Positions 6,031 to 57,400 of a stretch of 64,000 nucleotides of DNA are shown one piece after another. How positions within the stretch are numbered: the stretch's first letter is position 1; each line of letters opens with the position of its first letter. The stretch spans positions 124,001-188,000 of the IMG/VR virus record IMGVR_UViG_3300005613_000001; one strand, 5' to 3'. The notes under the pieces are model-generated. The model did not search any database. It was not told the DNA's origin and saw only the letters and a program-made list of their open reading frames with translations. Made by a program: the position numbers and the translations under genes.

Positions 6031-6419
6031 ATATCTGGTGGTTCTTCTACACTTTCTACTATGTATGTTCCTGTGCCGTCTTCATTCCAATCAATAGAAC
6101 CCGCAATCATCTTGCCAGATTGAAACGCAAGATTGGCACTTAACATCCGAGCATCATCATCACTTGTCACTGAAAACTGGTCGCCAACCTTAATATAAAG
6201 AGGCGGGGGACGCTTGCCAAATATGCTAGCAATTGCCGTTGTGGCAGCAAAAACAACAACTACAGTAAGCCACATCAATCCAAATGAAACAACAAGACAA
6301 AGGAAACCTATACCAATGTTTAACGTTTCAACTCCAAGCCAACTCTTCACCAAATAAACTGCTAGCACATGGTATCCTATAGTAATGCCCGCCGCAATTA
6401 AATAAACGAAATAATGCAT
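6012..6419 (-). CDS. Membrane protein (two TM segments); stop codon lies inside tRNA-Glu
   Basis: Hydrophobic N-half. Confidence 0.6.
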   Translation of the reverse strand: MHYFVYLIAAGITIGYHVLAVYLVKSWLGVETLNIGIGFLCLVVSFGLMWLTVVVVFAATTAIASIFGKRPPPLYIKVGDQFSVTSDDDARMLSANLAFQSGKMIAGSIDWNEDGTGTYIVESVEEPPDMAPSSS

Positions 6420-7174
6420 TACTCCGCCTCCGTGAAAACGTGTCGGCAGCCTATCTTGTACAAAAAATCGGCATACATCCTAACATTCCTCCCCCTAGCT
6501 CGCCTCTTCATTTTACGACAAACTTGTTTCAAATTTAACTTTTGCCACTTGCGGAACCCGGATTCGTCAGCCCAAGGAGGCAACCAGTTATACCAACTCT
6601 TAAAATATCGCCACGCTAGAAACATCCCTCTTTGTAAATCATGGTTAAAACCACTCATCCAAAAGTGATCGAATAAGTCCCGACCATCACCTTGATCTCT
6701 ATAATCATCCCATATATGTCGGGCTGTGCATATATGCCATGCATCATGAATGTTCGGAAGAGGAGGACGATACAAAAGACTTCGTGTACTTTTAATAGGC
6801 TCCGTTGCAAAAGCAACATACAAATGTTGATTCCCCACCCTCGCCATTATCACGTAGGGAAATTGAAGATGGTAAGCTTTATCATAATAATAAATCGTTC
6901 GTTTTTGAGGCGGATATTCCCTTATCTCCACAGACATTTTCTTGATTATTGTGCGATAATTTCTAGTTTCCCCTAATGCTCTATCTCTTTCCTTCCGCCT
7001 CTTTTTTTCTGCTTTTTCTCTTTCTTTTCTCGCTATTTCCTTTAAGACTTTTTTTAATTTCTTTCTCACGCCCGCTTTGGGACGCCCAATTTTCTTTGCT
7101 AGAGCTTCAATACCCATAGTCTCATTATGCTCTAGCAATACCGCCACTTCATCTTTTGTCCATCGTTTAGCCAT
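6419..7174 (-). CDS. HTH/coiled-coil + prokaryotic E2 family D-like domain
   Basis: YHLQFPYV...LYVAFATEPIKS...LYRPPLPNIHDAWHIC. Confidence 0.6.
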   Translation of the reverse strand: MAKRWTKDEVAVLLEHNETMGIEALAKKIGRPKAGVRKKLKKVLKEIARKEREKAEKKRRKERDRALGETRNYRTIIKKMSVEIREYPPQKRTIYYYDKAYHLQFPYVIMARVGNQHLYVAFATEPIKSTRSLLYRPPLPNIHDAWHICTARHIWDDYRDQGDGRDLFDHFWMSGFNHDLQRGMFLAWRYFKSWYNWLPPWADESGFRKWQKLNLKQVCRKMKRRARGRNVRMYADFLYKIGCRHVFTEAE

Positions 7175-7722
7175 TATTCATCATCCATAAAATAATGTCG
7201 ATTTCTTGCCCAATATACTTGTCCGCACTTATAATCTAAAAACCTCTTATATGAAACAACATGCTTGTCGTCTTTGAAAAACCATAAACGCCTCTTGCTC
7301 TGCTGTAATTTCAACACTACAGGTCCAATTTTGAGGCGGGACCAGTTTTTATAACCCCCAAAATATTTCCTTGCAAAACGTCGCCCCGCCTCCATATGTT
7401 GATTGAATGCTGTTTGCCAAACCAAATCAAAGGGGTGATTGGCATATTCATGCTGCCCGCCTAAACAGAAATGCCAATCTCCAACATGTACATTGGGAAG
7501 GGCAGGGAAATACAATTCAGTATGAAGGCTTTGAACGGGTTGTGCAGCAAAGGCTATATGTATCCTTTGCTGCTGTGCTAAAGCAAGAATGACATACGGG
7601 AACTGGAGGGTGTATTCTTTATTCCCGATGCGAACTGTGCGACGAGTGGGTTTATATTCCCGCACAGTCAGAGAAGGTTTAGCAAGTAATCTCCGATAAC
7701 TTTGATTAGCTTCTATAATCAT
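7174..7722 (-). CDS. Prokaryotic E2 family D-like protein
   Basis: YTLQFPYV...IHIAFAAQPVQS..TELYFPALPNVHVGDWHFC. Confidence 0.6.
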   Translation of the reverse strand: MIIEANQSYRRLLAKPSLTVREYKPTRRTVRIGNKEYTLQFPYVILALAQQQRIHIAFAAQPVQSLHTELYFPALPNVHVGDWHFCLGGQHEYANHPFDLVWQTAFNQHMEAGRRFARKYFGGYKNWSRLKIGPVVLKLQQSKRRLWFFKDDKHVVSYKRFLDYKCGQVYWARNRHYFMDDE

Positions 7723-34265: not shown

Positions 34266-34871
34266 TTATCTTCTCCCAGATGTTAATTGTTCCATAAAGG
34301 TTTTAAATGGGGCTCTGTAAAACGTAGGAGCCTTATTCATTATTTCATATAACTTCTCTAAAGTCAATTCAGACCACTTGTTAGCAGTCATTCTTTGACC
34401 ATAATCAGAAAAGCCTCTGAATTCACTCTGCCAAAACTTCGTGACCATTGCATCTAAATCTAATTTAGGTTGCCAGTAGCAATGATCCCAGTCCAAACAG
34501 CACGGTCCAAATATCTTTTGGTCAAAATGAGCCGGGAAAGGCATACGACTAAGCGTTGCTTCCATAAGCTCTTCCTTGCTCAATTCCGACAAATCCTCAA
34601 AAGCATATCCGCCATATAAATATCCTCCCTCTCTATACGGCTGGAATGCAAACACCAAATGAGGAAATTGAACATATATGTGCTTCTTCTGGTTATAAAC
34701 AGTTCTCCTTTTCGGTGGATACAATCTTACTTCATGACCATCCTGCACCAGCAAAATCTTGTACTCAGGATCGCTTTTTGCGAAATCACTCTTCTTTACG
34801 GCCTTCTTTCGTGGTTTTCGTGTTCGTGGAGTTCGCTTCTTTGCACTTTTAACAGCTTCGCTCATTTCCAA
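34266..34871 (-). CDS. Divergent prokaryotic E2 family D-like protein
   Basis: PPKRRTV...VQFPHLVFAF...YLY.GYAF...MPFP....CC. Confidence 0.45.
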   Translation of the reverse strand: MEMSEAVKSAKKRTPRTRKPRKKAVKKSDFAKSDPEYKILLVQDGHEVRLYPPKRRTVYNQKKHIYVQFPHLVFAFQPYREGGYLYGGYAFEDLSELSKEELMEATLSRMPFPAHFDQKIFGPCCLDWDHCYWQPKLDLDAMVTKFWQSEFRGFSDYGQRMTANKWSELTLEKLYEIMNKAPTFYRAPFKTFMEQLTSGRR

Positions 34872-34908
34872 AACTCCTTTTCAATTCAATACACTCAGGC
34901 TATACCAA

Positions 34909-34993
34909 ATACAACGTCAGGATTCGAACCTGAACTTCTGGCTCCAATTCGCTTATGCTTTAGCCAGCGTGCTACCATTACACTACAATCGTA
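34909..34993 (-). ncRNA. tRNA-Gln-like RNA with ~13-nt insertion in anticodon loop
   Basis: Gln-type D-arm GTGT/GCAC, CTGGC/GCCAG stem, 20-nt loop ending TTGGA, intact T-arm. Confidence 0.6.
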
Positions 34994-35182
34994 CCGCTTT
35001 CAGAACGCTACTGAAATCTAACTACTCAAACTAACTACTAACTATGGACTATTGAGTATTGACCTGTCCAGGCCCTTCCCCTGGCTCACGGTTTTTATAG
35101 CCTAAGCGAATGTTATCAATACCTTTCATCCATAGGGTTCATTAACTCTTTCATCAAATTATTTCACGAACCTACTCACAAG

Positions 35183-43251: not shown

Positions 43252-43265
43252 GTTAAATCAAAAAG

Positions 43266-43350
43266 CGCTGGGGCTTGGAATCGAACCAAGCGTTTTTACC
43301 GGCTGCCCATTATAGACATGAGGTAGTGTTCTACCATTGAACTACCCAAC
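43266..43350 (-). ncRNA. tRNA-like RNA with enlarged (21-nt) anticodon-loop region
   Basis: D-arm GTTC-AATGGTA-GAAC, T-arm CTTGG-TTCGATT-CCAAG, no assignable anticodon. Confidence 0.55.
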
Positions 43351-43352
43351 AG

Positions 43353-43424
43353 TGGTCGGAGCGGGAATTGAACCACGCATCTCCCTCTTTAATGGAGGGC
43401 GTTCTAGCGTTGAACTATCCAACC
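43353..43424 (-). tRNA. Aberrant tRNA with TTA (ochre) anticodon, probably non-decoding
   Basis: CCCTC-CA TTA AA-GAGGG; A33, no D-loop GG, bulged T-stem. Confidence 0.45.
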
Positions 43425-43651
43425 ATAACCCTGTCGGGGTCGCAGGGCTTAAAACCCATTTTGACGATCCAACAGGGAACAAATAGTGAGAGTAAGAGGT
43501 TTAGTTCCTTTACTGGCGTTCAGGAATCTAACCTGCCAGGCCCTACTCTCCAATTTGGACTACACACAACGCAACTTTTGGTCACAAAGTACCGGGTCGC
43601 TTTGCGTCCCAGATCTTTGCTTAGGGGTCGCTTTGCGTCCCCCGACCAAAG

Positions 43652-45565: not shown

Positions 45566-46639
45566 ATGAGGTTCATTCCATATCTGGGCAACAAACGCAA
45601 GCTCATAGACCCCATCCTAAAGGCGATAGGACAGCAGGGCAAGGTCTTGGACCTGTTCTCGGGGAGTGGGGTTGTCAGCTATCATCTGCGAAAGCGAGGG
45701 GCTGTCGTCCATGCCAATGATACCGCCTCTTATTCTTATCATATTAATAAGACATACTTGGGAAGAATTGACCGCTCCGAACAGTTTTCCCAATATATAA
45801 ACTGGCTTAATAAATTTAGTGAAAATCCCAGAGAAAGATACTTTTCTAGATATTACAGTGAGAATCCAGACGCTTCAAAGGAAAGAATATACTACACAGC
45901 GAGAAATGGAGCATTCATAGATTTCATTCTTCAACAAGTGTGGGCCAGAACTTGGATTCAAAAAATATTTGAACATTCCAACACCTGGGAATCTCCTGTT
46001 TTGTGTGATTTACTTTACCAAATGTGTACTCACGCAAACACTTCTGGCGTATTCAAATCTTGGCATAAGAAATTTGCAGGAGAGAAACGATTTGAGGGGG
46101 TTCACAAGAGAGTGCATAAATCCAATCTTAAGCGTATTACGACACCTATTAAACTTGAAGTGCCTACGATACCGGAAGGTCCAGAAGGTCAAGCATTCCA
46201 ATACGATGCAATAGAATTCTTTGATCGGGTGGATGATGAATACGACGCAATTTATATTGACCCGCCGTACAATACCCACCAGTATTCTGCTAATTATCAC
46301 CTATTAGAACAAGCCTGCCGCCCCTTTGAAAGAAGATATATACCAACTGACGATCAGGTGAGTGGGATTCAACCGGACTTATACAAATCCCCATATTGCA
46401 GCAAAAAGAAGTTCCACAAGACTTTTGTTGCTCTTTTTGATAAAATTAAAGACCGAACCAATCGCCTCGTAGTCTCCTACAACTCAAAAGGCTTTCTGGG
46501 CCAACAGGAGATTAAAAATCTATTAGGGGAAAGGTTTAATGAGGTTTCAGTCCAAGAGATAGATTACTTTAATTATAGAGGCGGCAGGGCGGCTAAGGAG
46601 CCTGTTAAGGAGCTATTGTTCATTGCGGAGAATTCATGA
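45566..46639 (+). CDS. DNA adenine methyltransferase (D12/FokI-like class)
   Basis: PYLGNKRKL; DLFSGSGVVS; YIDPPYN.HQYSANYHLLE. Confidence 0.88.
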   Translation: MRFIPYLGNKRKLIDPILKAIGQQGKVLDLFSGSGVVSYHLRKRGAVVHANDTASYSYHINKTYLGRIDRSEQFSQYINWLNKFSENPRERYFSRYYSENPDASKERIYYTARNGAFIDFILQQVWARTWIQKIFEHSNTWESPVLCDLLYQMCTHANTSGVFKSWHKKFAGEKRFEGVHKRVHKSNLKRITTPIKLEVPTIPEGPEGQAFQYDAIEFFDRVDDEYDAIYIDPPYNTHQYSANYHLLEQACRPFERRYIPTDDQVSGIQPDLYKSPYCSKKKFHKTFVALFDKIKDRTNRLVVSYNSKGFLGQQEIKNLLGERFNEVSVQEIDYFNYRGGRAAKEPVKELLFIAENS

Positions 46640-48678: not shown

Positions 48679-48909
48679 CTACACAAAATCCGATGCATCA
48701 AACTCAGACATTCTTCGGATCATTACCGCAAGTTCATCATTAGGCCACCAACTTGGAAGATCACTCCAATAGCCAGTTGTTGGCTTAAATTCACCACCAA
48801 ATTGCAAGTGGGCTTGCTGTAGCAATATTGTGGCAGCAGCAAGAGTATAAGGCCCAAACACTTTTGGACCACCATCATACGGCTTTGTGACGATTACGTA
48901 ATCCATCAT
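48679..48909 (-). CDS. Hypothetical protein
   Basis: ORF chain. Confidence 0.5.
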   Translation of the reverse strand: MMDYVIVTKPYDGGPKVFGPYTLAAATILLQQAHLQFGGEFKPTTGYWSDLPSWWPNDELAVMIRRMSEFDASDFV

Positions 48910-49112
48910 TCATCCTTCTTGTAGATTGCATCAAATACTTCCTTGCGATGCACAGGAACCTCCTTCGGGGCTTCAACGCCCAATCTCACTTTGTCTCCGC
49001 GTACCTCTACAACTGTAATCACAACAGGGTTGTCTTTGTCGCCAATGATGATACTCTCATTTTTCTTGCGACTTAAAACAATCATGATGAAACTCCTAAA
49101 AGGTAAACGCAT
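48906..49112 (-). CDS. csrA: Carbon storage regulator (start probably MIVLSRK)
   Basis: VLSRKKNESIIIG...ITVVEVRGDKVRLGVEAPKEVPVHRKEV. Confidence 0.93.
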   Translation of the reverse strand: MRLPFRSFIMIVLSRKKNESIIIGDKDNPVVITVVEVRGDKVRLGVEAPKEVPVHRKEVFDAIYKKDE

Positions 49113-49171: not shown

Positions 49172-49498
49172 TTAGCCCTTTTGACCAGCAACCTTCACAA
49201 ACTCCAGAGTATCATGCTCTTGGAGAATGTAGTTGCCATCAACCAACTCGCCATTCACGCGAGCTTGGGCGTCTTCAGGGATATTGAGAACGTGCTTCAA
49301 TTCTCCCCGAACGGTCACTACATCGTGACCGGAAATACTTAAGGTTTGTGCTTCAGCCCCATAAAGGACTTCTACGTTACCGAGCGCCTTATCGATCTTT
49401 TCCTTTGAAGCGGAAACATCGGGCGCGTTCCCTGCCCCACCGCTTGGCTTTTGCTGAGCAGCTTGCTTGGGCTTTTCCTTTTGAACTTGCTTCGCCAT
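49172..49498 (-). CDS. Ubiquitin-like (beta-grasp) protein
   Basis: ARVNG..VD..YIL...DTLEFVK.AG.KG C-terminal Gly; low-complexity N-terminus; E1/JAB context. Confidence 0.78.
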   Translation of the reverse strand: MAKQVQKEKPKQAAQQKPSGGAGNAPDVSASKEKIDKALGNVEVLYGAEAQTLSISGHDVVTVRGELKHVLNIPEDAQARVNGELVDGNYILQEHDTLEFVKVAGQKG

Positions 49499-49530
49499 TT
49501 AAACTCTCCTTGTGATAGAAACAACCAACC

Positions 49531-50217
49531 TTACGATCTTTTACGAGTGTTAGACTTATTAGCTAGAACATCAAGATACGCCTCATCGTACTCTATCTCA
49601 CCTTCAAGGTACGCATAAAACGCATTCAACATTCCGGCTGCAATGTAGTTGTTGGCGATCAAAAGCTGTGGTTCACTCACAACTTCAACGTCACAACCAC
49701 CCTCACGCTCTTCAATGTCTGCCGGACTTTCATCTTCGGGCTCTTCAATTTCAGGATGATATTCATTTGCAATTGGAAGGGTTAGGTTTTCCCCATCTTT
49801 GCGAATATGAACCTGAACGTTTCCGTCAATGTAGTCGTTTCCACCCGAAATCACAACCACATTATCCAACTCTTCACAATGGTCGGATACCAACTTGCGA
49901 GTGGCATGATTATCCACACACGAAAAGATAAGATCACCTTCCCTCAAAAGCATGATGATGTTATCTTGGTCGATATAAGTGGGGTGCGACCGGAAGAAAA
50001 TAGAGGGGAATTCTTTCTCCAACACCTTCGCGGTTACTTCCGCTTTATTCCCCAATTCATCGAAGGCTTGTCGGTCACGATTCTTTTCTTCGTAAGTATC
50101 TCCATCAATAAGAGAAATTTCCGTGTCCTGTAACTCAGGATGGTAATTCAAAAACCTACAAAGCGTATCAAGTAAGCGACCGGCAATCCCGCCGCAACCA
50201 ATCACCCGTATTTTCAT
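49531..50217 (-). CDS. ThiF/E1-family adenylyltransferase
   Basis: VIGCGGI; IDGD..EEKN..RQ; SCVDNHATR; catalytic-type Cys before PQL..AN. Confidence 0.9.
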   Translation of the reverse strand: MKIRVIGCGGIAGRLLDTLCRFLNYHPELQDTEISLIDGDTYEEKNRDRQAFDELGNKAEVTAKVLEKEFPSIFFRSHPTYIDQDNIIMLLREGDLIFSCVDNHATRKLVSDHCEELDNVVVISGGNDYIDGNVQVHIRKDGENLTLPIANEYHPEIEEPEDESPADIEEREGGCDVEVVSEPQLLIANNYIAAGMLNAFYAYLEGEIEYDEAYLDVLANKSNTRKRS

Positions 50218-51563
50218 GCTTTACTCCCTTCATCATTAGGCTCCGAATCCGGCAATGCATCTTTCTGCGAAGCAAGACCATATCCATCCACCTTAATATT
50301 TTCTTCGGTGTCTTCTTCGCCTTCTTCGCCTTCCCAAACATCATCACCCATTTGGGCATTTCGTTCTTGCTCTTCGGCAGCTTCAAGTTCGGACTCTTTT
50401 ACCCAAACACCACCGGCTGTTTGCATATAAGTTTCGCCACCCGTATCTTCATCATCGTCTTCAATATCCTGATGAAGTACCGTGCCGCCACTACGACTGC
50501 CTTGACCAAAGCCAAAACCTCCATAGTTTTGCCAAACTTTTTTTGAGACTTTGGGCAACCAATGAGCATCCATGTGGGCTTCCATTTCGGCCTTCATGGT
50601 CTGCAATTGTTCGGCTGTAAAGTCAAAGTCGTAGTAGTTTTGGTAACCACTGGAAATGTAGTAGCTCTTCTTGGCTTTAGCATCACCAATGCGAACCATA
50701 TTCAACGCAACATTTTCACAATCTACCTCTTCCCGGTAGTCATTCAACACCAAAGAAGATGCAACCGAAAAATGTTCGTCAGTAACGTGGCCCAAGGTTA
50801 AATGCACACCATCAAAACTGGCTTCATCACCTGTATCTGTGCCAGAGTGGAACGCATTAAAACTGGGGTGGGAGTGAATAGTGCCGACATTCATAAAACC
50901 GGCATTAGCCAATTCAAGCATAGCTTGATCCGGCTGTCCCCACTGGTTTTGTTCAGCCGCCGTCAAATTGGCGGGAGCATTAAGTTTGCCACTAGGACTC
51001 TTAACATAGAATCTGCGGTCGTATGAAATAGAACCGCCACTCACTTCCTGCTTTGGACAATGCAAAGCATATTGCTTCGTTTCGGGATTAAAGGCAATGA
51101 TAACAACACCTTCTGCCTTGTGTGCCCGATAAACTTTGCGGAAGAACAGCAATGCCCGATAAATGATTTCACCTGGCAACTTGGGCAGCATCATGTTGAT
51201 ATACGGTTCAACAGCATAAAGCCCTTGATAGTTGCCTTCATCATCATCTTCGAACTTTTCACCAGTAAGAGGATCGATGAGAGTCAAATCTTCTTCATTC
51301 TCATCATCATCCTTCTTCCAGTAGCTATAAGTAGGTTTTGTTTCGGTTTTTGAACCCTTTAGATAGACAGGCCCATCCGGTGTGTCAATACAATATCCCA
51401 CTTTCACCATACCGGGAACGTCTTTCACTGGCATGGCAATTAGACCCTCAAACAGCCCAACGTCCTTGCGGACAAAGGCACCATTCGCAGCGATCACGAA
51501 ATATGTCCCCCGTTCGGGGAATTCCACACCATCTTTAGCTACTATAACCGGATAGATTCCCAT
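50214..51563 (-). CDS. JAB/MPN metalloprotease (deconjugase) with long acidic extensions
   Basis: E...VGTIHSHPSFNAFHSGTDTGDE. Confidence 0.88.
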   Translation of the reverse strand: MGIYPVIVAKDGVEFPERGTYFVIAANGAFVRKDVGLFEGLIAMPVKDVPGMVKVGYCIDTPDGPVYLKGSKTETKPTYSYWKKDDDENEEDLTLIDPLTGEKFEDDDEGNYQGLYAVEPYINMMLPKLPGEIIYRALLFFRKVYRAHKAEGVVIIAFNPETKQYALHCPKQEVSGGSISYDRRFYVKSPSGKLNAPANLTAAEQNQWGQPDQAMLELANAGFMNVGTIHSHPSFNAFHSGTDTGDEASFDGVHLTLGHVTDEHFSVASSLVLNDYREEVDCENVALNMVRIGDAKAKKSYYISSGYQNYYDFDFTAEQLQTMKAEMEAHMDAHWLPKVSKKVWQNYGGFGFGQGSRSGGTVLHQDIEDDDEDTGGETYMQTAGGVWVKESELEAAEEQERNAQMGDDVWEGEEGEEDTEENIKVDGYGLASQKDALPDSEPNDEGSKA

Positions 51564-51602
51564 ACCATTTTCCTTCTGTTAGTGTTGTTGCTGTCTATCC
51601 TA

Positions 51603-51630
51603 ATCTTACCATGAATTCCAAGAGTGGAAA
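51603..51630 (-). promoter_or_regulatory. Possible promoter upstream of JAB-E1-Ubl
   Basis: TTTCCA-16 nt-TAAGAT with extended TG, same geometry as other promoters. Confidence 0.45.
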
Positions 51631-51648
51631 AAATTTAGGCGGGATTTC

Positions 51649-52869
51649 TCAATAATCGTAGTATTTCTTCTTCAAGACATAGCGGAAGGCGTCATACCCG
51701 TACAGGTCAGCCCCGTACAATTCCTTTTTTTCTTCATTGGGGGGCGGGTCTTGCGCACAGCTAGCTAAAAGCTTCTCATATTCCAGCCGTTTGGCCTCAG
51801 CGGCGCGGGTGGCTTTTTCGTATCTTTTCTGTTCTACTTCTGCGGCTTCCCGAGCCGATTTTAAAAGATCTTTCTCGCTGTCAAGGGCTTGATCGTATCT
51901 CTGTTGCATAACCGCCCGAACATCATCGTGCATTTGTGGGATGATAGCCCGAAGCACATCCAGAACATGCCCCTCAATTATAGCTTTTTCGTTTATTCGC
52001 GTGCTCTCTAGACCGTCGAAACACTGCATTACCTGACTTTGAATCTTATCAGAATAAAAGGCAACCGCCTGTTGGGTTAAAAAGTCTCTTTCCCCAACAT
52101 TTAAGTCAACATAATCCCTCAAGGCCCGTTCTGTGTTATGCCAAATATCTCCCAAAACAAACAAAGAATTCTTTGCTGTCTTTCTTTCCCATTTCTTTAG
52201 AGTCAATCCTTTTGGCGTATACTTTTGAAAGGCATAAACTGCATCAGTATTAAACGGTCTCGCCCAGAATTCTGCAATTGTTTTATTCACCACTTCACAA
52301 AGACTATCACCAGTCGGAGGAAAACCTGCCCCCATACAAACATGCATGGTTCCTGAATCCATGATGTTAGGCAAATTGGCGAAGTACAAATCGTCATTAA
52401 GCGATTGTAGTGGCTTAGTTCTATACGCTACTTGAAGGAGGACTACTTCATTGTGATAAGTGACAGTAAAAATAAAAACAACATAAGGAAAAGACAACCT
52501 GTATGCCGTCTTACTACTATCAATACAATTTTCCTCTACAAACCTCTCAGAAAAACTAACTGTGCGAACCTGAGGCTTCTGCTCTACTATAAGCGTATAC
52601 TTCCCCTTATGATTTTCACAGAAAAACTTAGTGCCATCGGGAACAATAAAATTGTTTGTTTTTTGCTCAACCCACCTGGCAATATTTAATTCTATAGTTT
52701 TAGCCACATGCTCGCTAAGCTCGCCAATTGCACCCAAAGTATCATTGGCTGCCTGTATAGCTGTTTTTTGTGATATTTGAGAGACTGTGGACTGAACGAT
52801 AGAAGGCACTAATTCTTTAACTAGCGCCTTCACCCGAGAGTCAGACAAATATTTATGTGGTCTTACCAT
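51649..52869 (-). CDS. Prokaryotic E2 family D-like protein with helical flanks
   Basis: YRLSFPYVVF...LQVAYRTKPL.S...LY..NLPNI.....HVC.G...FW...FN.D. Confidence 0.7.
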   Translation of the reverse strand: MVRPHKYLSDSRVKALVKELVPSIVQSTVSQISQKTAIQAANDTLGAIGELSEHVAKTIELNIARWVEQKTNNFIVPDGTKFFCENHKGKYTLIVEQKPQVRTVSFSERFVEENCIDSSKTAYRLSFPYVVFIFTVTYHNEVVLLQVAYRTKPLQSLNDDLYFANLPNIMDSGTMHVCMGAGFPPTGDSLCEVVNKTIAEFWARPFNTDAVYAFQKYTPKGLTLKKWERKTAKNSLFVLGDIWHNTERALRDYVDLNVGERDFLTQQAVAFYSDKIQSQVMQCFDGLESTRINEKAIIEGHVLDVLRAIIPQMHDDVRAVMQQRYDQALDSEKDLLKSAREAAEVEQKRYEKATRAAEAKRLEYEKLLASCAQDPPPNEEKKELYGADLYGYDAFRYVLKKKYYDY

Positions 52870-53954
52870 ACATCATTCTCGCTATAGCTGTTGCTGTACA
52901 GCAGTTCTTTCTGCTTCGACTTCTTCTTTTTCTTATCACCGCCTCTAGTTTTTTCTGCTTCTCTTAAAATTCCACAACAAGCCTCATAAAGCTTGTCATA
53001 AAGGCGATTCCTGAAACAGCTAACGGCATTACGGTCAGCAGCAGAAGCCGCCTCTTGATTAGAAAGATCACCAATCAATCTTCTCAATGCATTTGAAGCT
53101 TCTGTGACAGCCGAATCAACAATTGGACCCACTCTCATTTTTAAATCTTGAGAAGTGTCGTATGCCATTGCCATAACATCGTGGAGCGTTGATCTGTGTT
53201 GCCAGTTTTTATTCACAATAAAAAGAGGGTCTTTTTCACTCTCAGAGGCCCAAGCGGCAAGATTTCTCAATCTTTCATCCGACCTAGCTTCAGCATAAAA
53301 ATTGTCATGAATATCATTATTAAAAGTAGAACCCCAAAATCCCTCAATAATTGAATTTCCAATGGTAGAAAGTGACCAATCTTCTTGGGGAATTCGGTCA
53401 AGGGGTGCATAAACGGCATCTCGCCCAACACAGCAAACAAAATTGGCATCAATATTGGGAAGATTCGGTCTATAAAGTGAACTAGCAAGTGTTTTCAGTG
53501 GAATCCTACCGTAAGCCACTTGAAGACTGCGAGGATAGATTCGCCCCTGTTCCCTTTTAAGCCACATTAGAAACACAACATATGGAAAAGCAAGCCGATA
53601 GTACCCATTGCCTAATTCGCATTCAAATTTAACTGTTCTAACAACAGGCTTTTGCTCTACGACAAGCAATTTCATATCCCCGATAGTTTTAAGGAGACGG
53701 GTGCCTTCGGGGACCACTTCAAGAACATTGTTTGTTTCTTCCCAATCATTACAAAACCGCAGAAGCCCATCACTCAACCTACCCTTGAAACCATTAACAA
53801 TACTTTCCGCAATATTTGAGACTTCTACATGCACCCTTTGGGAAAGGCTAGACATCGAAACTTTAAGAGCTTCGGCAATAACATCTTTCATCTGCCGTGA
53901 CGTTAGTAGATCTGTAACTTTGCGATCAACTAGGCTGTAATCTGCATCCCGCAT
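52863..53954 (-). CDS. Prokaryotic E2 family D-like protein, tandem paralogue
   Basis: YRLAFPYVVF...LQVAY...PL..L...LY.PNLPNI....VCC.G...FW.S.FN.D. Confidence 0.7.
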   Translation of the reverse strand: MRDADYSLVDRKVTDLLTSRQMKDVIAEALKVSMSSLSQRVHVEVSNIAESIVNGFKGRLSDGLLRFCNDWEETNNVLEVVPEGTRLLKTIGDMKLLVVEQKPVVRTVKFECELGNGYYRLAFPYVVFLMWLKREQGRIYPRSLQVAYGRIPLKTLASSLYRPNLPNIDANFVCCVGRDAVYAPLDRIPQEDWSLSTIGNSIIEGFWGSTFNNDIHDNFYAEARSDERLRNLAAWASESEKDPLFIVNKNWQHRSTLHDVMAMAYDTSQDLKMRVGPIVDSAVTEASNALRRLIGDLSNQEAASAADRNAVSCFRNRLYDKLYEACCGILREAEKTRGGDKKKKKSKQKELLYSNSYSENDVW

Positions 53955-54498
53955 GTCTCTTCCTTGCCTTTGATTTTAATTTAGCAATCGCTCTCGTAAT
54001 CCTTTGATTCACCCGGCCTCTTGTCACTCCATGTCTTTCCCCGACCATCTTCATACTCAATCGTTCCAAATAATACTCCAACAGCATTTGACGATCTAAT
54101 TGTTCATAAGATTTTTCTAATTCAACTCCCAATATCCAACTCAACGCTTCATTATCTTCAAAGAGGCGAGCAGTATCCTCATCTAGTATTTCAATTTCAT
54201 CACCACGAACTTCAGGAAACCTACCCCTTTCACGAAGTCCTTGCCACACTGCATTTCTTATACAAGCCGTAGCATAAGTAGAAAATTGGGTGCCTTTGCT
54301 GTGCTTGAAAGTATCGAGAGCTTGAGTTAGCCCCAAAAGGGCATCAGAATATTCTTCAGAATCTTTAACAGAACCTTTGACCTTACAATATTTTAAAACA
54401 TAGTCAAAGGCTAACCCAAGGTGGTCTTCTATATTGAGCACATCTTCTTTAATGCACTCAACCTTGGGGACTTCCAACAACTCAGAAGGAGGAGTCAA
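53926..54498 (-). CDS. RNA polymerase sigma factor (sigma70 family, regions 2 and 4)
   Basis: ALLGL.QA.DTF...KGTQFSTYA..CIRN; SM..VG...GVTRGRV.Q...RA..KL. Confidence 0.85.
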   Translation of the reverse strand: MTPPSELLEVPKVECIKEDVLNIEDHLGLAFDYVLKYCKVKGSVKDSEEYSDALLGLTQALDTFKHSKGTQFSTYATACIRNAVWQGLRERGRFPEVRGDEIEILDEDTARLFEDNEALSWILGVELEKSYEQLDRQMLLEYYLERLSMKMVGERHGVTRGRVNQRITRAIAKLKSKARKRHAGCRLQPS

Positions 54499-54583: not shown

Positions 54584-54835
54584 TTATCTCTCGCGGTAGG
54601 TTATCCGTCCCTTAGAGAGATCATACGGAGAAAGCTCCACAGTCACCTTATCTCCTGGCGTGATACGGATATAATTCTTCCTCATCTTGCCGCATAATGT
54701 TGCCAGTACGGTGATGTTTTTCTCGCTTTCTTCTACCTGAAGTTCAACACGAAATGTGGTATTAGGCAACGCCTCAGTAACCACTCCATGTGCTTCAATT
54801 CCCTTTTCTTTTGCCATTTTCCCCCTTTTTCCCAT
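54584..54835 (-). CDS. infA: Translation initiation factor IF-1 (start probably MAKEKG)
   Basis: G.V.EALPNT.FRVEL...[30 protein letters not shown]. Confidence 0.95.
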
Positions 54836-55622
54836 GATGATCTACAGCTTGCCCACTTTGACCATCCATAAATCCTTTGAGTTCTTCAAAAGACCACGGA
54901 GTATAACCGTAACCTAATCGGGCTCTATAATCAATACCAATATCTACCATTTTTGCATTCGGCAAATGTTCCTCTCGCCAATGTTCAAAATTGCCGTGAG
55001 AATGACCATAGCAATGCCAAACGCCTCGGTGAGATTTATCCCACACTGCATGTGCTGTGTGAGTTATCAGTATTTTCTGCCCTTCCCATCTTATCGTCAC
55101 CGTATCGTGGAAAGACCGAATCAACAGTTCTAGGAAGCGGCGGTCTGTAGTCTCTTTTTCATGCCTTTGCCACTGCTCCAAAGCAGACTCTTGAGAAACC
55201 TCCCCACCCAAAACCTTTTCCAATAAATCTTTATGGAAACGATCAGGACGCATTAAATGCCGCATATCCTTATCGTGGTTACCCCAAACAATATGGATAT
55301 TGCGGCAAACAATCCTATCCAATAGATGCTTTAAACGCCAAACCGATCCAAAGATAATGTCGCCAGCGATCCAAAGATCGTCATTCTCTCCTACAACAGC
55401 ATTTGTATTATCAATAATGCTGCTATTCATCCGATCCACAGTCTCACGACTGTATCGGAGTGATCTTACTGCATCATACTCTACTTCTCCCTGCTGATAC
55501 AATTGTTCCATTTGCAGGAAATTTTGCCGCTCACCTTCATTCATAAACTCTAAACGGCGGCAATAAGTCAAAATCCTCGCATGATCAAGGTGCCAATCTG
55601 CGGTAAAAAACGGTCTTCCCAT
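54795..55622 (-). CDS. Calcineurin-like metallophosphoesterase
   Basis: ADWH, GD, GNHD, TH, GHSH. Confidence 0.85.
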
Positions 55623-55701: not shown

Positions 55702-55729
55702 ATTATATCATGGAAATGTTTGAAGTAAA
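55702..55729 (-). promoter_or_regulatory. Sigma70-type promoter
   Basis: TTTACT-16 nt-TATAAT, extended TG. Confidence 0.6.
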
Positions 55730-55766
55730 TGGGTTCGCCCCCCACTATTGGGGGGCGAACCCTATG

Positions 55767-56873
55767 TTAAACGGCCCAATGGGGGTTATCCAGTGTCCAT
55801 TTCACCACCTGATTAATGCTGTCCTCAAAGGTGATCGGCATTTTCCAGCCGAGCCCCTTCATCTTCGCATCATCAAGAGCGTAACGGCGATCATAACCCT
55901 TACGAGCCGATTCAGAGGGAACTAATTTATATTTAAGTTCTTTACCCATAAATTTTGCAATCATTTGGGCCAACTCAAGGTTATCCAATTCAACGTCACC
56001 ACAAACATTATATCTGTCTGGACGTTCGGCACCATCCTTATACATTGCCGGAGAGAACTGGGAAAGAAAAACAAAGGCATCGGCATGGTTCTTAGCGTGT
56101 AGATAATACCTAGCCCCAATAGAAGTTGTGCCATCATCATTCAAATCTGCATATACCGGCATTTCTTGATCTAATGCCACTTTCTGAATGATCTTCGGCA
56201 AAAACTTCTCAGGGTCTTGCCATTCACCAAAATTATTCATTGTGTTTGTAATCACTACTGGCACATCATAAGTTCGCCAATAAGCAATCGCCATCGCCTC
56301 CTGCGCCGCCTTGCTGGCTGCATATGGATTTGAAGGCATAATTACATCCCATTCATGGTGCGCCTGATCTGGCTTGGCTTCTCCATACACTTCATCCGTT
56401 GAAACTTGGAAAAATATCTTGGGTTTAATCTTACGAGCGAATTCCAGCATGTTGATGGACAACTCATAATTATTCCTCAAACAATGAACAGGATCGGTCG
56501 TAGACCTCTCTACAGCACTATCACTCGCCATGTTGATAATATAATCAATTGGCTTTTCCACAACCTGCCCATTTTCAAACCTTCGCTCTAAAATCTGGTT
56601 TTCTAGCTGCTGATCTATAGGAGCGATTAAATCGTGATAGTAATTTTTGAGGCGGGTGTTCATCTGGTTCAATGCATCAATATGTTTCCGCCCCTTTAAT
56701 TTATAACATTTTCGTTTGTAGTTCTCTAAAGCATCATTCAAACGAGTGTATGTGCCTTTGTGGCGAAACGAATCAAGACCAATGATTTCCCAATCAGTAT
56801 TGAATAGAAAGTAGTCTACACAATGGGAACCTATAAACCCCGCATGTCCGGTAAGAAGAACTCGCTTAGGCAT
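55767..56873 (-). CDS. rfbB: dTDP-glucose 4,6-dehydratase-like NAD-dependent epimerase (start MPKRVLL)
   Basis: TGHAGFIG; AS.S.V.RS; VSTDEVYG; PSNPYAASKA; EKFLP; RK.YD.RYALD. Confidence 0.82.
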   Translation of the reverse strand: MPKRVLLTGHAGFIGSHCVDYFLFNTDWEIIGLDSFRHKGTYTRLNDALENYKRKCYKLKGRKHIDALNQMNTRLKNYYHDLIAPIDQQLENQILERRFENGQVVEKPIDYIINMASDSAVERSTTDPVHCLRNNYELSINMLEFARKIKPKIFFQVSTDEVYGEAKPDQAHHEWDVIMPSNPYAASKAAQEAMAIAYWRTYDVPVVITNTMNNFGEWQDPEKFLPKIIQKVALDQEMPVYADLNDDGTTSIGARYYLHAKNHADAFVFLSQFSPAMYKDGAERPDRYNVCGDVELDNLELAQMIAKFMGKELKYKLVPSESARKGYDRRYALDDAKMKGLGWKMPITFEDSINQVVKWTLDNPHWAV

Positions 56874-56875
56874 TT

Positions 56876-57400
56876 TTATCTCCAATGGAAGTGATAGTTG
56901 TATCTTGAATATGGTTGATAATACGGACGATGATAATACGGACGATATTGATATGGCAACGTGTAGGGATAAAACCATGCATGTTGTTTTGTGACTCTTT
57001 GATTAGACATTTCCCTTTGTTTTAATATTTGCTGTATTCGCATGTCTTGTGCCTTGCGAAAAGATTCATGAGCCATTTGAGCTTGAGCAACCTTCACCTT
57101 ATAAACATCAAGAAACATCCTCGCCTCGGTATTGCTCATACCTTCAAATTCTGCCTTCTTTTCCTGATAGTCCGCCTCAGTAAAATCTTTTCTAACGCGG
57201 AATTCATAGGCCAACCGAGATAAGTACCAATTTTTCTCCGTTTGAAGGGTAGCATCAAGAGCGGTGTCCGCCACCTCCTCCGTTTCCTCCTCCATTGGCA
57301 TTTCTATAACAACAGGCGGGGGAGGATCAACCCAATCCATTGTAAACCCCATATGAAGATCACCCACAATAAACGCTGATAATATAAATAGACTATTCAT
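56876..57400 (-). CDS. Secreted-like protein with Tyr/Pro-rich tail
   Basis: Hydrophobic N-terminus. Confidence 0.55.
   Translation of the reverse strand: MNSLFILSAFIVGDLHMGFTMDWVDPPPPVVIEMPMEEETEEVADTALDATLQTEKNWYLSRLAYEFRVRKDFTEADYQEKKAEFEGMSNTEARMFLDVYKVKVAQAQMAHESFRKAQDMRIQQILKQREMSNQRVTKQHAWFYPYTLPYQYRPYYHRPYYQPYSRYNYHFHWR

What the first reader, a model, noticed from the sequence alone, without database searches (positions are those of the whole stretch)
49172..53954. Complete phage-borne ubiquitin-like conjugation cassette (E2, E2, JAB, E1, Ubl)
Seen: contiguous genes for two E2-family-D-like proteins, a JAB protease with intact HSH..S..D, a ThiF/E1 with Cys, and a beta-grasp Ubl ending AGQKG, followed by csrA. 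Known: PRTRC-type cassettes and bacterial Bil/Bub systems conjugate Ubls to proteins, and Bil is anti-phage. Inference: the phage runs its own protein tagging, either of host proteins or its own virion proteins, or uses the JAB to strip host defence conjugates.
Basis: partly seen in the sequence, partly recalled or inferred. Interest (0 to 1): 0.72.

Follow-up and report, generated by a model that had tools for sequence, protein, structure and literature searches.

The report
Huge-phage ubiquitin-like protein tagging cassette
A 527-kb phage carries a complete, conserved gene set (two E2-like enzymes, a JAB protease, an E1 activator and a small ubiquitin-like protein) that most likely attaches that protein to other proteins; this is a distant, untested phage version of the bacterial PRTRC cassette.

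Summary
Five co-directional minus-strand genes encode two paralogous E2-like proteins, a JAB/JAMM protease, a minimal ThiF-type E1 and a beta-grasp Ubl that ends in Gly108. A sigma factor gene lies upstream and csrA downstream.

The E2 call does not rest on the window proteins, which have no Pfam hit. It rests on:
- homologues that hit Prok-E2_D and PRTRC_B;
- a pLDDT-94 core model whose best structural matches are UBC/E2 folds and "PRTRC system protein B";
- an invariant LPN-x7-9-Cys motif.

The catalytic residues of the JAB, the loop Cys175 of the E1 and the G-x-K-G end of the Ubl are invariant in about 30 viral homologues. The order E2(-E2)-JAB-E1-Ubl recurs in about 31 IMG/VR contigs. A complex prediction places the Ubl tail in the E1 adenylation pocket (0.69 against a best control of 0.00).

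It is not a PRTRC member by NCBIfam cut-offs, and it lacks ParB and PRTRC C and E. I read it as a new phage variant of the uncharacterised 6d/PRTRC kind.

One addition: the genome holds about 12 E2-like paralogues but only one E1 of this type, one Ubl and one JAB.

Targets and biological role remain unknown.

The parts
52863..53954 (-). E2A: a UBC/E2-like protein of 363 aa. Layout: N-terminal long helix (residues 6-69), E2 core (about 74-266), C-terminal helical hairpin ending in Trp. LPN is at 165-167 and the candidate catalytic Cys at 175.
   Evidence: ORF. Paralogue of E2B, E 8e-25. The family has 1339 cluster representatives. E100, P103, P124, N167, C175, W207 and W235 are invariant in 44 sequences. 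17/44 homologues hit PF14460 and 5/44 hit TIGR03737. The core model has pLDDT 94. The best structural matches are UBC folds at Z 5.5-4, and 'PRTRC system protein B' at E 3.7e-9.
51649..52869 (-). E2B: a second UBC/E2-like paralogue of 406 aa. LPN is at 166-168 and the Cys at 178. It has a long coiled-coil-like C-terminal region and overlaps the end of E2A by 7 nt.
   Evidence: the Cys aligns with C175 of E2A; 189 bits to the E2-core profile.
50214..51563 (-). JAB/JAMM metalloprotease of 449 aa. Layout: N-terminal domain of about 140 aa, JAMM core (E151, H230, H232, S240, D243), acidic low-complexity C-terminal tail.
   Evidence: PF14464 at 24.8 bits against a cut-off of 25. TIGR03735 PRTRC_A at 26.3 bits against a cut-off of 101.8. 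The motif residues are invariant in 31 viral homologues. There are 82 metagenomic homologues, one of which JGI names PRTRC protein A.
49531..50217 (-). E1: a minimal ThiF-type adenylation enzyme of 228 aa. Features: GxGGxxG at 7-13, D38/D40, R49/Q50/K58, D102-N103, R107, and the invariant Cys175 between the adenylation core and the conserved PQL motif. It has no rhodanese domain and no CxxC zinc motif. Its start overlaps the JAB stop by 4 nt.
   Evidence: PF00899 at 60 bits. TIGR03736 PRTRC_ThiF at 54.4 bits against a cut-off of 144.75. Invariant columns. The predicted Ubl-tail contacts fall on these motifs.
49172..49498 (-). Ubl of 108 aa. A basic, Gln-rich, probably disordered tail (1-40) is followed by a beta-grasp domain (about 41-108) ending ...VKVAGQKG, then the stop codon.
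   Evidence: Weak ThiS and TGS hits. In 28 homologues, TGS hits 21, ThiS hits 10 and Rho_N hits 13. G105, K107 and G108 are invariant, and most homologues end exactly at the Gly. Docking to E1 scored ipSAE 0.69 against a best control of 0.00.
53926..54498 (-). Sigma-70/ECF-type sigma factor of 190 aa, directly upstream. Its end overlaps the E2A start by 29 nt. This is context and possibly the same operon.
   Evidence: PF04542 and PF04545; TIGR02937 at 66.9 bits. A sigma factor gene also directly precedes the E2 gene in L003 and L010, and lies about 500 bp upstream in L007.
48906..49112 (-). CsrA-like RNA-binding regulator, directly downstream. The true start is probably the internal Met at residue 10. 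This is context.
   Evidence: PF02599 E 1.3e-22; NF002469 at 75.4 bits. The same position is occupied in the closest relative, L003.
55702..55762 (-). A strong terminator-like hairpin (14 pairs) followed at once by the best promoter-like site in the region. This is a possible start of a transcription unit running metallophosphoesterase, IF-1, sigma, E2A, E2B, JAB, E1, Ubl, CsrA.
   Evidence: consensus scan only; promoter-like sites are not enriched over shuffles. Gene spacing.
6419..7722 (-). Two adjacent short E2-like paralogues: 6419-7174 (251 aa) and 7174-7722 (182 aa). Both keep the FPY, LPN and Cys motifs.
   Evidence: E2-core profile at 58 and 45 bits. Motif alignment. The ORF 6419-7174 passes the PF14460 cut-off (31.3 bits).
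34266..34871 (-). A weak, short E2-like paralogue of 201 aa. The Cys is kept but LPN is lost.
   Evidence: E2-core profile at 17.3 bits, E 3.4e-4. Alignment. No Pfam hit.

Best explanation
The cassette is a self-contained, phage-encoded ubiquitin-like protein conjugation cascade. It is a divergent relative of the bacterial 6d/PRTRC type.

Proposed mechanism:
1. The Ubl is made with its reactive Gly108 already at the C-terminus.
2. The minimal ThiF-type E1 binds the Ubl tail in its ATP pocket, adenylates Gly108 and takes the Ubl as a thioester on Cys175.
3. The Ubl passes to the Cys of E2A (C175) and/or E2B (C178). These are UBC-fold proteins flanked by long helices that probably serve for pairing or for holding targets.
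4. The E2s transfer the Ubl to amino groups of target proteins without a separate E3.
5. The JAMM protease reverses the tag. In relatives whose Ubl carries extra residues after the Gly, it also matures the precursor.

What is shown here: gene content, motifs, fold, conserved gene order and the predicted E1-Ubl docking.
What is inferred: the thioester relay, isopeptide formation, the role of the JAB and any target.

The cassette sits next to a sigma factor, IF-1 and CsrA here, and next to an RNA polymerase beta' gene in other phages. That makes gene-expression machinery a reasonable but untested place to look for targets.
For: - Complete set of intact genes with tight or overlapping junctions.
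- E1: above the ThiF Pfam cut-off. The nucleotide-binding and Mg2+ motifs and Cys175 are invariant in 28-32 viral homologues.
- Ubl: beta-grasp family hits across homologues. The invariant G-x-K-G end lies exactly at the stop codon in most. A few homologues carry one extra Cys or a 6-17 aa tail, which implies protease maturation.
- E1-Ubl docking: ipSAE 0.69 against a best control of 0.00. That mark was reached by 58 of 80 solved complexes and 2 of 110 mismatched pairs. Ubl residues 101-108 touch E1 G7, G9-12, 100-104, R107 and 125-129.
- E2: homologues hit Prok-E2_D and PRTRC_B. The core model has pLDDT 94. The top ~30 of 48,161 chains are UBC/E2/UEV folds, including bacterial Cap2, CdnG-E2 and BubB. 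AFDB matches are 'PRTRC system protein B' (E 3.7e-9, TM 0.67) and 'UBC core domain' (E 6.5e-6). The N167-to-C175 spacing of 8 equals that of the HPN-to-Cys motif of classical E2s (my own knowledge), and both residues are invariant in 44 sequences.
- JAB: the full E...HxHx7Sx2D motif is invariant.
- The order E2(-E2)-JAB-E1-Ubl is conserved in about 31 viral contigs, down to about 41% E1 identity. A Bacillus plasmid has E2-JAB-ThiF in the same order.
Against: - No biochemical evidence exists for this family or for PRTRC/6d.
- E2A and E2B have no direct Pfam or NCBIfam hit.
- Matches to solved structures are modest: Z of 5.5 or less, and Foldseek PDB E of 0.09 or worse.
- The complex prediction listed no confident Ubl-E2 contact.
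- ThiF + beta-grasp + JAMM trios also occur in sulfur-carrier pathways.
- No E3 and no target are identifiable.
- Short E2-like paralogues occur in another 533-kb virus record that has no ThiF-type E1 at all. This fold therefore does not always work with such an E1.
Confidence: 0.65

Rival explanations
1. Sulfur-carrier pathway. The E1 adenylates the Ubl, which becomes a C-terminal thiocarboxylate that donates sulfur to a small molecule or to tRNA. The JAMM protease only trims the carrier, as with QbsD/QbsE or Mec+/CysO. The Cys-containing E2-like proteins would act as persulfide or sulfur relays rather than as conjugating enzymes.
For: - The ThiF + ThiS-like beta-grasp + JAMM trio matches known sulfur-carrier sets (my own knowledge).
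- Several homologues end ...KKG-C, i.e. the Gly plus one Cys. This recalls carriers that need JAMM trimming.
- A radical SAM gene lies two to three genes upstream of the cassette in the main phage group.
- The window carries 41 tRNA genes.
Against: - There is no rhodanese domain and no sulfurtransferase or PP-loop partner next to the cassette.
- The Ubl ends in a single Gly after Lys, not Gly-Gly.
- One or two UBC-fold proteins with an invariant Cys are strictly linked to the trio in about 31 contigs.
- The radical SAM gene is absent from this window's cassette and from its closer relatives.
Confidence: 0.12
2. Counter-defence by interference. The useful activity is the JAB removing host defence conjugates (Bil Ubl on tail proteins, CBASS cGAS conjugates), and/or the E2-like proteins and Ubl acting as decoys that soak up host E1/E2 enzymes. 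Under this reading the phage does not build its own functional tags.
For: - Characterised bacterial Ubl systems (type II CBASS, Bil) are anti-phage (PMC10557695, PMC11601596).
- The genome has about 12 E2-like paralogues.
- A second 533-kb virus has five such paralogues but no E1 or Ubl. That fits proteins acting on host machinery.
Against: - A decoy role does not explain why the E1 catalytic motifs, the E1 Cys, the E2 Cys and the exact C-terminal Gly of the Ubl are all invariant and strictly syntenic.
- The JAB is most similar to the cognate PRTRC_A type, not to Cap3 or BilC.
- PADLOC gives only weak E1-E2 hits of 21 bits or less.
Confidence: 0.12
3. Partition or maintenance module, as is often assumed for PRTRC on plasmids, ICEs and prophages. 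The cassette would help a replicon to segregate or persist rather than modify proteins during lytic growth.
For: PRTRC is named for its ParB link and has been annotated as a 'partitioning cassette' in a Burkholderia prophage (PMC13366799). The weak best family hits here are to the PRTRC_A and PRTRC_ThiF models.
Against: - No ParB gene is near the cassette. The only ParB-like match is generic (38.9 bits against a cut-off of 278.6) and lies about 95 kb away.
- PRTRC_C and PRTRC_E are absent.
- The partition idea itself has no experimental basis.
Confidence: 0.04

Closest known systems
PRTRC (ParB-related, ThiF-related cassette; NCBIfam TIGR03734-03742), which corresponds to operon type 6d of Iyer, Burroughs and Aravind 2006 (PMC1779556)
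   Same: - Separate genes for an E2-like protein lacking the classical His (LPN instead of HPN), a JAB with an extra N-terminal domain, a short ThiF-type E1 without rhodanese, and a small beta-grasp Ubl with a conserved terminal Gly.
- The best, though weak, family hits are PRTRC_A and PRTRC_ThiF.
- Homologues hit PRTRC_B, and the E2 core matches the AFDB cluster 'PRTRC system protein B'.
- E2-JAB-ThiF occur in the same order on a Bacillus plasmid.
- Both are experimentally uncharacterised.
   Different: - All scores are far below the NCBIfam cut-offs.
- There is no PRTRC_C, PRTRC_E or dedicated ParB, and no separate alpha-helical protein.
- The conserved His downstream of the Cys described for 6d E2s is not present. 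The invariant residues are W207 and W235 instead.
- The E2 is duplicated and carries long helical extensions, or is about 860 aa in other phages.
- The cassette sits in lytic-type huge phages next to transcription and translation genes.
Bil (BilABCD, operon type 6C) and Bub (type 6E) bacterial ubiquitination-like antiphage systems
   Same: Ubl + E1 + E2 + peptidase encoded together. Conjugation proceeds without a dedicated E3 (PMC10557695, PMC11601596). BubB and Cap2 appear among the structural matches of the E2 core.
   Different: - The Bil E1 has tandem inactive and active adenylation domains, and its E2 is the CEHH type.
- Bub uses Tyr/Ser oxyester chemistry, lacks the catalytic cysteines and has the DUF6527 protease (PMC11601596).
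- Here the E1 is a single 228-aa domain with a conserved Cys and the E2s keep a Cys.
- Those systems are host defences. This one is carried by the phage.
Type II CBASS Cap2/Cap3
   Same: ThiF-type adenylation domain, UBC-like E2 and JAB protease. There are weak PADLOC E1-E2 hits to the E1 (21 bits or less).
   Different: Cap2 is an E2-E1 fusion that conjugates the CD-NTase itself and has no free Ubl. Here the genes are separate, a dedicated Ubl is present and there is no cyclase.
ThiF/ThiS, MoeB/MoaD and CysO/Mec+ sulfur-carrier pairs
   Same: The E1 fold and motifs, the beta-grasp partner, and the predicted insertion of the tail into the ATP pocket. Some of these systems include a JAMM protease.
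   Different: The phage cassette has no rhodanese or sulfurtransferase partner. Its Ubl ends in a single terminal Gly preceded by Lys. UBC-fold proteins with a conserved Cys always accompany the trio.

Membership tests
PRTRC system (NCBIfam) | ThiF protein scores above the TIGR03736 cut-off (144.75 bits) | tested here: not met
   54.4 bits, E 1.1e-14. It is the best NCBIfam hit but is far below the cut-off.
PRTRC system (NCBIfam) | JAB protein scores above the TIGR03735 PRTRC_A cut-off (101.8 bits) | tested here: not met
   26.3 bits, covering only the C-terminal JAMM motif region.
PRTRC system (NCBIfam) | E2-like protein matches TIGR03737 PRTRC_B | tested here: not met
   E2A and E2B have no hit at E<=1. 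Only 5 of 44 homologues hit weakly, best E 1.6e-6. Structural similarity to 'PRTRC system protein B' is significant (E 3.7e-9, TM 0.67), so this is kinship without membership.
PRTRC system (NCBIfam) | Ubl matches TIGR03738 PRTRC_C | tested here: not met
   No hit for the Ubl and none anywhere in the genome at E<=0.1.
PRTRC system (NCBIfam) | Linked ParB-related protein (TIGR03734) and PRTRC_E | tested here: not met
   The only ParB-like match is generic: 38.9 bits against a cut-off of 278.6, about 95 kb from the cassette. PRTRC_E has no match. PRTRC_D and PRTRC_F were not tested.
Operon type 6d (Iyer et al. 2006, PMC1779556) | Small standalone beta-grasp protein with a highly conserved C-terminal Gly | tested here: met
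   G108 is invariant in 28-29 homologues, and most end exactly there. Beta-grasp families TGS and ThiS are hit.
Operon type 6d (Iyer et al. 2006, PMC1779556) | E2-like protein lacks the classical His but has an absolutely conserved His downstream of the Cys | tested here: not met
   The first half is met (LPN, not HPN). No invariant His follows the Cys; the invariant downstream residues are W207 and W235.
Operon type 6d (Iyer et al. 2006, PMC1779556) | JAB with an N-terminal alpha+beta domain carrying a conserved Arg and Trp, plus a separate alpha-helical protein | tested here: inconclusive
   An N-terminal domain of about 140 aa with conserved P16, G28, K33 and G36 exists, but no conserved Arg or Trp was seen there. 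No separate helical gene lies in the cassette. The helical extensions of E2A and E2B might replace it.
UBC/E2 superfamily | UBC fold: beta-meander followed by the active-site loop and C-terminal helices | tested here: met
   The core model has pLDDT 94. The top ~30 VIA matches are all E2/UEV folds, at Z 5.5-4 with 119-130 aligned residues. E2s top the Foldseek PDB list, but not significantly. AFDB gives 'UBC core domain' at E 6.5e-6. The meander has six strands rather than four.
UBC/E2 superfamily | Catalytic Cys about 8 residues after the (H)PN motif, forming a thioester with the Ubl | tested here: inconclusive
   The motif is present and invariant: N167 and C175 in E2A, N168 and C178 in E2B. 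The spatial equivalence of the Cys was not checked residue by residue, and thioester formation cannot be tested here.
JAMM/MPN+ metalloproteases | E...HxHx7Sx2D metal-binding and catalytic motif | tested here: met
   E151, H230, H232, S240 and D243 are invariant in 31 sequences. PF14464 scores 24.8 bits, just under its cut-off of 25.
ThiF/MoeB/E1 adenylation enzymes | Pfam PF00899 above the cut-off, with a Gly-rich ATP loop and the Asp of the DN motif | tested here: met
   60.1 bits against a cut-off of 28.1. G7/G9/G10, D38, D40, R49, K58, D102, N103 and R107 are invariant.
Bil / Bub / type II CBASS | Bil: tandem-domain E1 and CEHH E2. Bub: Cys-less E1/E2 and DUF6527. CBASS: E2-E1 fusion with a CD-NTase. 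| tested here: not met
   The E1 is a single domain of 228 aa with a conserved Cys, and the E2s keep a Cys. There is no fusion. PADLOC gives only weak E1-E2 hits to the E1 and none to the other proteins.

The most novel reading that the evidence does not exclude
The phage runs a eukaryote-style branched tagging network. One Ubl, one E1 and one JAB would serve a panel of about a dozen E2-like paralogues, often encoded in adjacent pairs. Each would direct the tag to a different host or phage target, with the gene-expression machinery as a prime candidate. The cassette's linkage to a sigma factor, IF-1, CsrA and RNA polymerase genes is the basis for that suggestion. The E2 would then be the specificity element. 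This fits a report that a prophage PRTRC protein B is a target of a diversity-generating retroelement (10.64898/2026.10.01.756045).
Probability: 0.2. Interest if true: 0.85.

Novelty: new variant of a known kind. Interest (0 to 1): 0.66.

Why it matters
Every bacterial ubiquitin-like conjugation system studied so far (type II CBASS, Bil, Bub) is a host weapon against phages. This is a complete and strongly conserved set on the phage side. It is common in uncultivated huge phages, yet I found no counterpart in 50,697 deposited phage genomes.

If it conjugates proteins, it would show that phages also use protein tagging to take over or protect themselves from the cell. It would also give the first handle on the function of the long-known but untested 6d/PRTRC type.

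The proteins are small and separable, and their catalytic residues are predictable. The Ubl ends in Lys-Gly, so trypsin should leave a one-Gly remnant on modified lysines. That makes target discovery by proteomics practical.

Tried and rejected
- Whole-protein E2A model against PDB. Foldseek gave nothing significant, and the VIA wide search was dominated by the long helices. Modelling the core alone solved this.
- Profile of the E2 core and of the Ubl against PDB sequences: no E2 or ubiquitin hit.
- Phmmer of E2A and of the JAB against PDB sequences: only chance or weak Rpn11 matches.
- Single-protein scan of viral contigs with E2B found nothing. A broad 44-sequence alignment had no usable pattern. 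An 8-sequence alignment worked.
The spread of this clade in cellular genomes was therefore not measured.
- BLAST of the region and tblastn of E1 and E2A against deposited phages: no match.
- PHROGs and PADLOC gave nothing useful for E2, JAB or Ubl.
- No sequencing run was listed for the cassette, so expression could not be examined.
- An Atlas search of the ~580-aa C-terminal extension of the large E2 fusion proteins gave no credible lead.
- A self-comparison of alignment A4 was uninformative.
- Considered and rejected: membership in Bil, Bub or CBASS (the architecture differs), and PRTRC membership in the strict sense (cut-offs and accessory genes are not met).

Full report
**Setting**

The window is bases 124,001-188,000 of a 527,112-bp IMG/VR virus record that CheckV rates as complete. 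The record has a large-terminase match at about 438 kb. It has no multisubunit RNA polymerase beta' gene. The window alone carries 41 tRNA genes. This is a huge phage. Nearly all genes in the window lie on the minus strand.

**Check of the observation**

The five reported genes are uninterrupted minus-strand ORFs at the stated coordinates:

| Gene | Coordinates | Length |
|---|---|---|
| E2A | 52863-53954 | 363 aa |
| E2B | 51649-52869 | 406 aa |
| JAB | 50214-51563 | 449 aa |
| E1 | 49531-50217 | 228 aa |
| Ubl | 49172-49498 | 108 aa |

A sigma-70/ECF-type sigma factor gene (53926-54498) lies directly upstream. A csrA gene (48906-49112) lies directly downstream.

The junctions are tight: sigma/E2A overlap by 29 nt, E2A/E2B by 7 nt and JAB/E1 by 4 nt, and the other gaps are 32-85 nt. 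Most genes have an AGGA/GGAG-like ribosome-binding site.

A strong hairpin followed by the best promoter-like site in the region lies at 55762-55702. It sits upstream of a metallophosphoesterase gene and an IF-1 gene. The cassette may therefore be part of one longer transcription unit. This rests on a consensus scan only.

**The E1**

- It scores 60 bits on PF00899, above the cut-off of 28. Its best NCBIfam hit is PRTRC_ThiF, at 54 bits against a cut-off of 145.
- In 28 viral homologues the Gly-rich loop (G7, G9, G10), D38, D40, R49, Q50, K58, D102, N103, R107 and Cys175 are invariant.
- It is a bare adenylation domain, with no rhodanese domain and no CxxC pairs.

**The JAB**

- PF14464 scores 24.8 bits, just under its cut-off of 25. 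PRTRC_A scores 26 bits against a cut-off of 102.
- The full JAMM signature is present and invariant in 31 homologues: E151, H230, H232, S240 and D243.
- It also has an N-terminal domain of about 140 aa and an acidic tail.
- Its 82 database relatives are all metagenomic and often lie on contigs of 220-670 kb. JGI calls one of them PRTRC protein A.

**The Ubl**

- Its own hits to ThiS and TGS are only weak. Across 28 homologues the beta-grasp families recur: TGS in 21 and ThiS in 10.
- The C-terminus L-E-F-x-K-x-(A/S)-G-x-K-G is strongly conserved, with G105, K107 and G108 invariant.
- Most homologues stop exactly after the Gly. Nine carry one extra Cys, and two carry tails of 6 and 17 residues. 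That pattern is expected of a modifier whose terminal Gly is the reactive end and whose precursors are trimmed by a protease.
- In the main phage group the Ubl carries an N-terminal Rho_N/SAP-like helix-extended-helix domain (13 of 28, best E 3.4e-15). Here that domain is replaced by a basic, Gln-rich tail.
- A complex prediction was run with E1, the E2A core and Ubl residues 38-108. It scored ipSAE 0.69 against a best control of 0.00. That mark was reached by 58 of 80 solved complexes and 2 of 110 mismatched pairs, and these counts hold only roughly because my own alignments were used.
- The interface joins Ubl residues 101-108 to E1 residues 7, 9-12, 100-104, 107 and 125-129, which form the adenylation pocket. 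This resembles the solved MoeB-MoaD type of complex. It therefore shows likeness rather than proof of binding.

**The two E2-like proteins**

These were the least secure part of the finding.

- They have no Pfam, NCBIfam, PHROG or PADLOC hit of their own.
- They are paralogues: 28% identity over 245 residues, E 8e-25.
- A profile of the two finds 1339 cluster representatives at E<=0.001 among 1.84 billion proteins.
- Of 44 sampled homologues, 17 hit PF14460 Prok-E2_D (best E 9.8e-10) and 5 hit TIGR03737 PRTRC_B.
- Seven positions are invariant. They include N167 and C175 within a conserved N-L-P-N-x7-C-x-G stretch. In E2B the corresponding residues are N168 and C178.
- The order beta-sheet, (H/L)PN, about 8 residues, Cys, helices is that of classical E2 enzymes. 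That comparison rests on my own knowledge of the UBC family.
- The full-length model (pLDDT 84.5) shows the core flanked by a long N-terminal helix and a C-terminal helical hairpin. Those helices swamped the fold searches.
- A model of the core alone reached pLDDT 94.
- Against 48,161 PDB representatives, its top ~30 matches are all E2, UEV or related UBC folds. Z is 5.5-4.0 with 119-130 aligned residues, and bacterial Cap2, CdnG-E2 and BubB appear further down. The Z values are modest, but no other fold competes.
- Foldseek against PDB also ranks E2s first, without significance.
- Against AlphaFold DB clusters the core matches 'PRTRC system protein B' (E 3.7e-9, TM 0.67) and a 'UBC core domain-containing protein' (E 6.5e-6).
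- In BFVD it matches four uncharacterised proteins of uncultured phages.

I conclude that both proteins are UBC-fold, Cys-bearing relatives of the Prok-E2_D/PRTRC_B family.

**Conservation of the cassette**

- A pattern scan of IMG/VR found 34 loci. In about 31 of them the order E2(-E2)-JAB-E1-Ubl is kept.
- The closest relative, L003 (61% E1 identity), repeats the whole string sigma-E2A-E2B-JAB-E1-Ubl-CsrA.
- A sigma factor gene also directly precedes the E2 gene in L010, and lies about 500 bp upstream in L007.
- In the largest group of contigs there is a single E2 gene of about 860 aa whose extension has no recognisable domain.
- In that group the neighbours are SbcCD, a radical SAM enzyme and a WYL_2 protein upstream, and an RNA polymerase beta' gene downstream.
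- Deposited phage genomes gave no match to E1 or E2A.
- Plasmids hold ThiF genes at 27-34% identity. A Bacillus toyonensis plasmid has E2-JAB-ThiF in the same order. This agrees with the Bacillus entries of operon type 6d in Iyer et al. 2006 (PMC1779556).

**Comparison with known systems**

Iyer et al. (PMC1779556) described type 6d as having five parts:
- a Ubl with a conserved terminal Gly;
- a JAB with an extra N-terminal domain;
- an E1;
- an E2-like protein without the classical His;
- an alpha-helical protein.

As I recall, NCBIfam's PRTRC models cover the same system.

The phage cassette shares the four core parts and their best family hits, but it fails every NCBIfam cut-off. It lacks PRTRC_C and PRTRC_E, and it has no dedicated ParB. 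It also lacks the conserved His after the E2 Cys. It is therefore a relative of the type, not a member.

The characterised systems differ in architecture:
- Type II CBASS uses an E2-E1 fusion and has no free Ubl.
- Bil has a tandem-domain E1 and a CEHH-type E2.
- Bub uses oxyester chemistry, lacks the cysteines and has DUF6527 (PMC10557695, PMC11601596).

My searches of the held library found no experimental study of 6d/PRTRC and no description of this huge-phage clade. Canonical PRTRC genes have been annotated in prophages. In one case PRTRC protein B was a target of a diversity-generating retroelement (10.64898/2026.10.01.756045). In another the cassette was called a partitioning module (PMC13366799).

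**Mechanism**

The best-supported reading is a Cys-based relay from Ubl to E1 to E2, ending in isopeptide tags on target proteins, with the JAB as the reversing and maturing protease.

- Shown here: complete and conserved parts, motifs, folds, gene order and the predicted E1-Ubl docking.
- Inferred: the chemistry, the absence of an E3 and all biology.

The main rival is a sulfur-carrier role. It is compatible with the ThiF/beta-grasp/JAMM trio, with the Gly-Cys ends of some homologues and with the radical SAM neighbour in one clade. It leaves the strictly linked UBC-fold proteins unexplained.

**An addition to the finding**

The E2-core profile matches 12 ORFs in this genome. These are E2A, E2B and ten shorter paralogues of 129-341 aa. 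Three of the ten lie in the window, at 6419-7174, 7174-7722 and 34266-34871. Two pairs are adjacent.

All twelve keep the aligned Cys and the FPY and FW..F motifs, and about half keep LPN. One passes the Prok-E2_D cut-off directly. In contrast there is one E1 of this type, one Ubl and one JAB.

This could mean many E2s serve one modifier. However, a second 533-kb virus record has five short paralogues and no ThiF-type E1 or Ubl at all. The short proteins may therefore act in another way. This remains unexplained.

**Verdict**

It is a new phage variant of a known but untested kind.

Noticed in passing
window 6419-7174, 7174-7722 and 34266-34871; genome G000:C1 34334-34951, 345863-346597, 309520-310545, 73564-73953, 73950-74567, 6019-6660 and 325608-326222: There are ten further short E2-like (Prok-E2_D-type) paralogues besides E2A and E2B. 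All keep the aligned Cys, and two pairs are adjacent. Another 533-kb virus record (the one holding L036) has five such genes but no ThiF-type E1 or Ubl.
   Followed up: partly
window 5955-43979, minus strand: The window has 41 tRNA genes. They include suppressor-like tRNA(CUA) at 43265-43350 and tRNA(UUA) at 43352-43425, and one call with a four-base anticodon at 34908-34994. This may hint at stop-codon reassignment or read-through. The cassette genes themselves read normally in code 11.
   Followed up: no
window 54584-54835 (IF-1), 53926-54498 (sigma factor), 48906-49112 (CsrA), 54795-55622 (metallophosphoesterase): The cassette is embedded in a run of gene-expression regulators: a phage IF-1 (PF01176, E 2.3e-23), an ECF-type sigma factor and CsrA. 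A sigma factor gene directly precedes the E2 gene in L003 and L010 as well, and lies about 500 bp upstream in L007.
   Followed up: partly
L008-L035, e.g. L011:12638-13105: In the main phage group the Ubl has an N-terminal Rho_N/SAP-like helix-extended-helix domain (13 of 28, best E 3.4e-15). That would give the tag a nucleic-acid-binding module. Two homologues have two such repeats.
   Followed up: partly
L011, L019, L020, L021, L025, L030 and L031 (Ubl ends ...KKGC); L004 and L005 (tails of 6 and 17 aa after the Gly): Some Ubl homologues carry residues after the conserved terminal Gly. This implies maturation by a protease, presumably the linked JAB.
   Followed up: partly
G000:C1:218302-219171 (locus L001), outside the window: A second, more canonical ThiF-family gene (289 aa, 152 bits to PF00899) lies two genes from a cREC_REC (cyclic-phosphate processing receiver) domain protein, with a 270-aa ORF of unknown family between them. 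No Ubl, JAB or E2 was detected beside it.
   Followed up: partly
window 45566-46639 (+) and 55767-56978 (-): There is a D12-class N6-adenine DNA methyltransferase (PF02086, E 1.2e-21) on the opposite strand, and an NAD-dependent sugar epimerase/dehydratase (PF01370, E 1.8e-39) upstream of the proposed operon.
   Followed up: no
L008-L035, flanks of the cassette: In the main phage group the cassette lies between SbcD/SbcC, a radical SAM enzyme and a WYL_2 protein on the upstream side, and a phage RNA polymerase beta' gene on the downstream side.
   Followed up: partly
A3 alignment, C-termini of the E2A-type proteins (P0001, P0004-P0008): E2A-type proteins end in a conserved ...(P)P-x-x-E-x-W, with Trp as the last residue. 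E2B-type proteins do not. The meaning is unknown.
   Followed up: no
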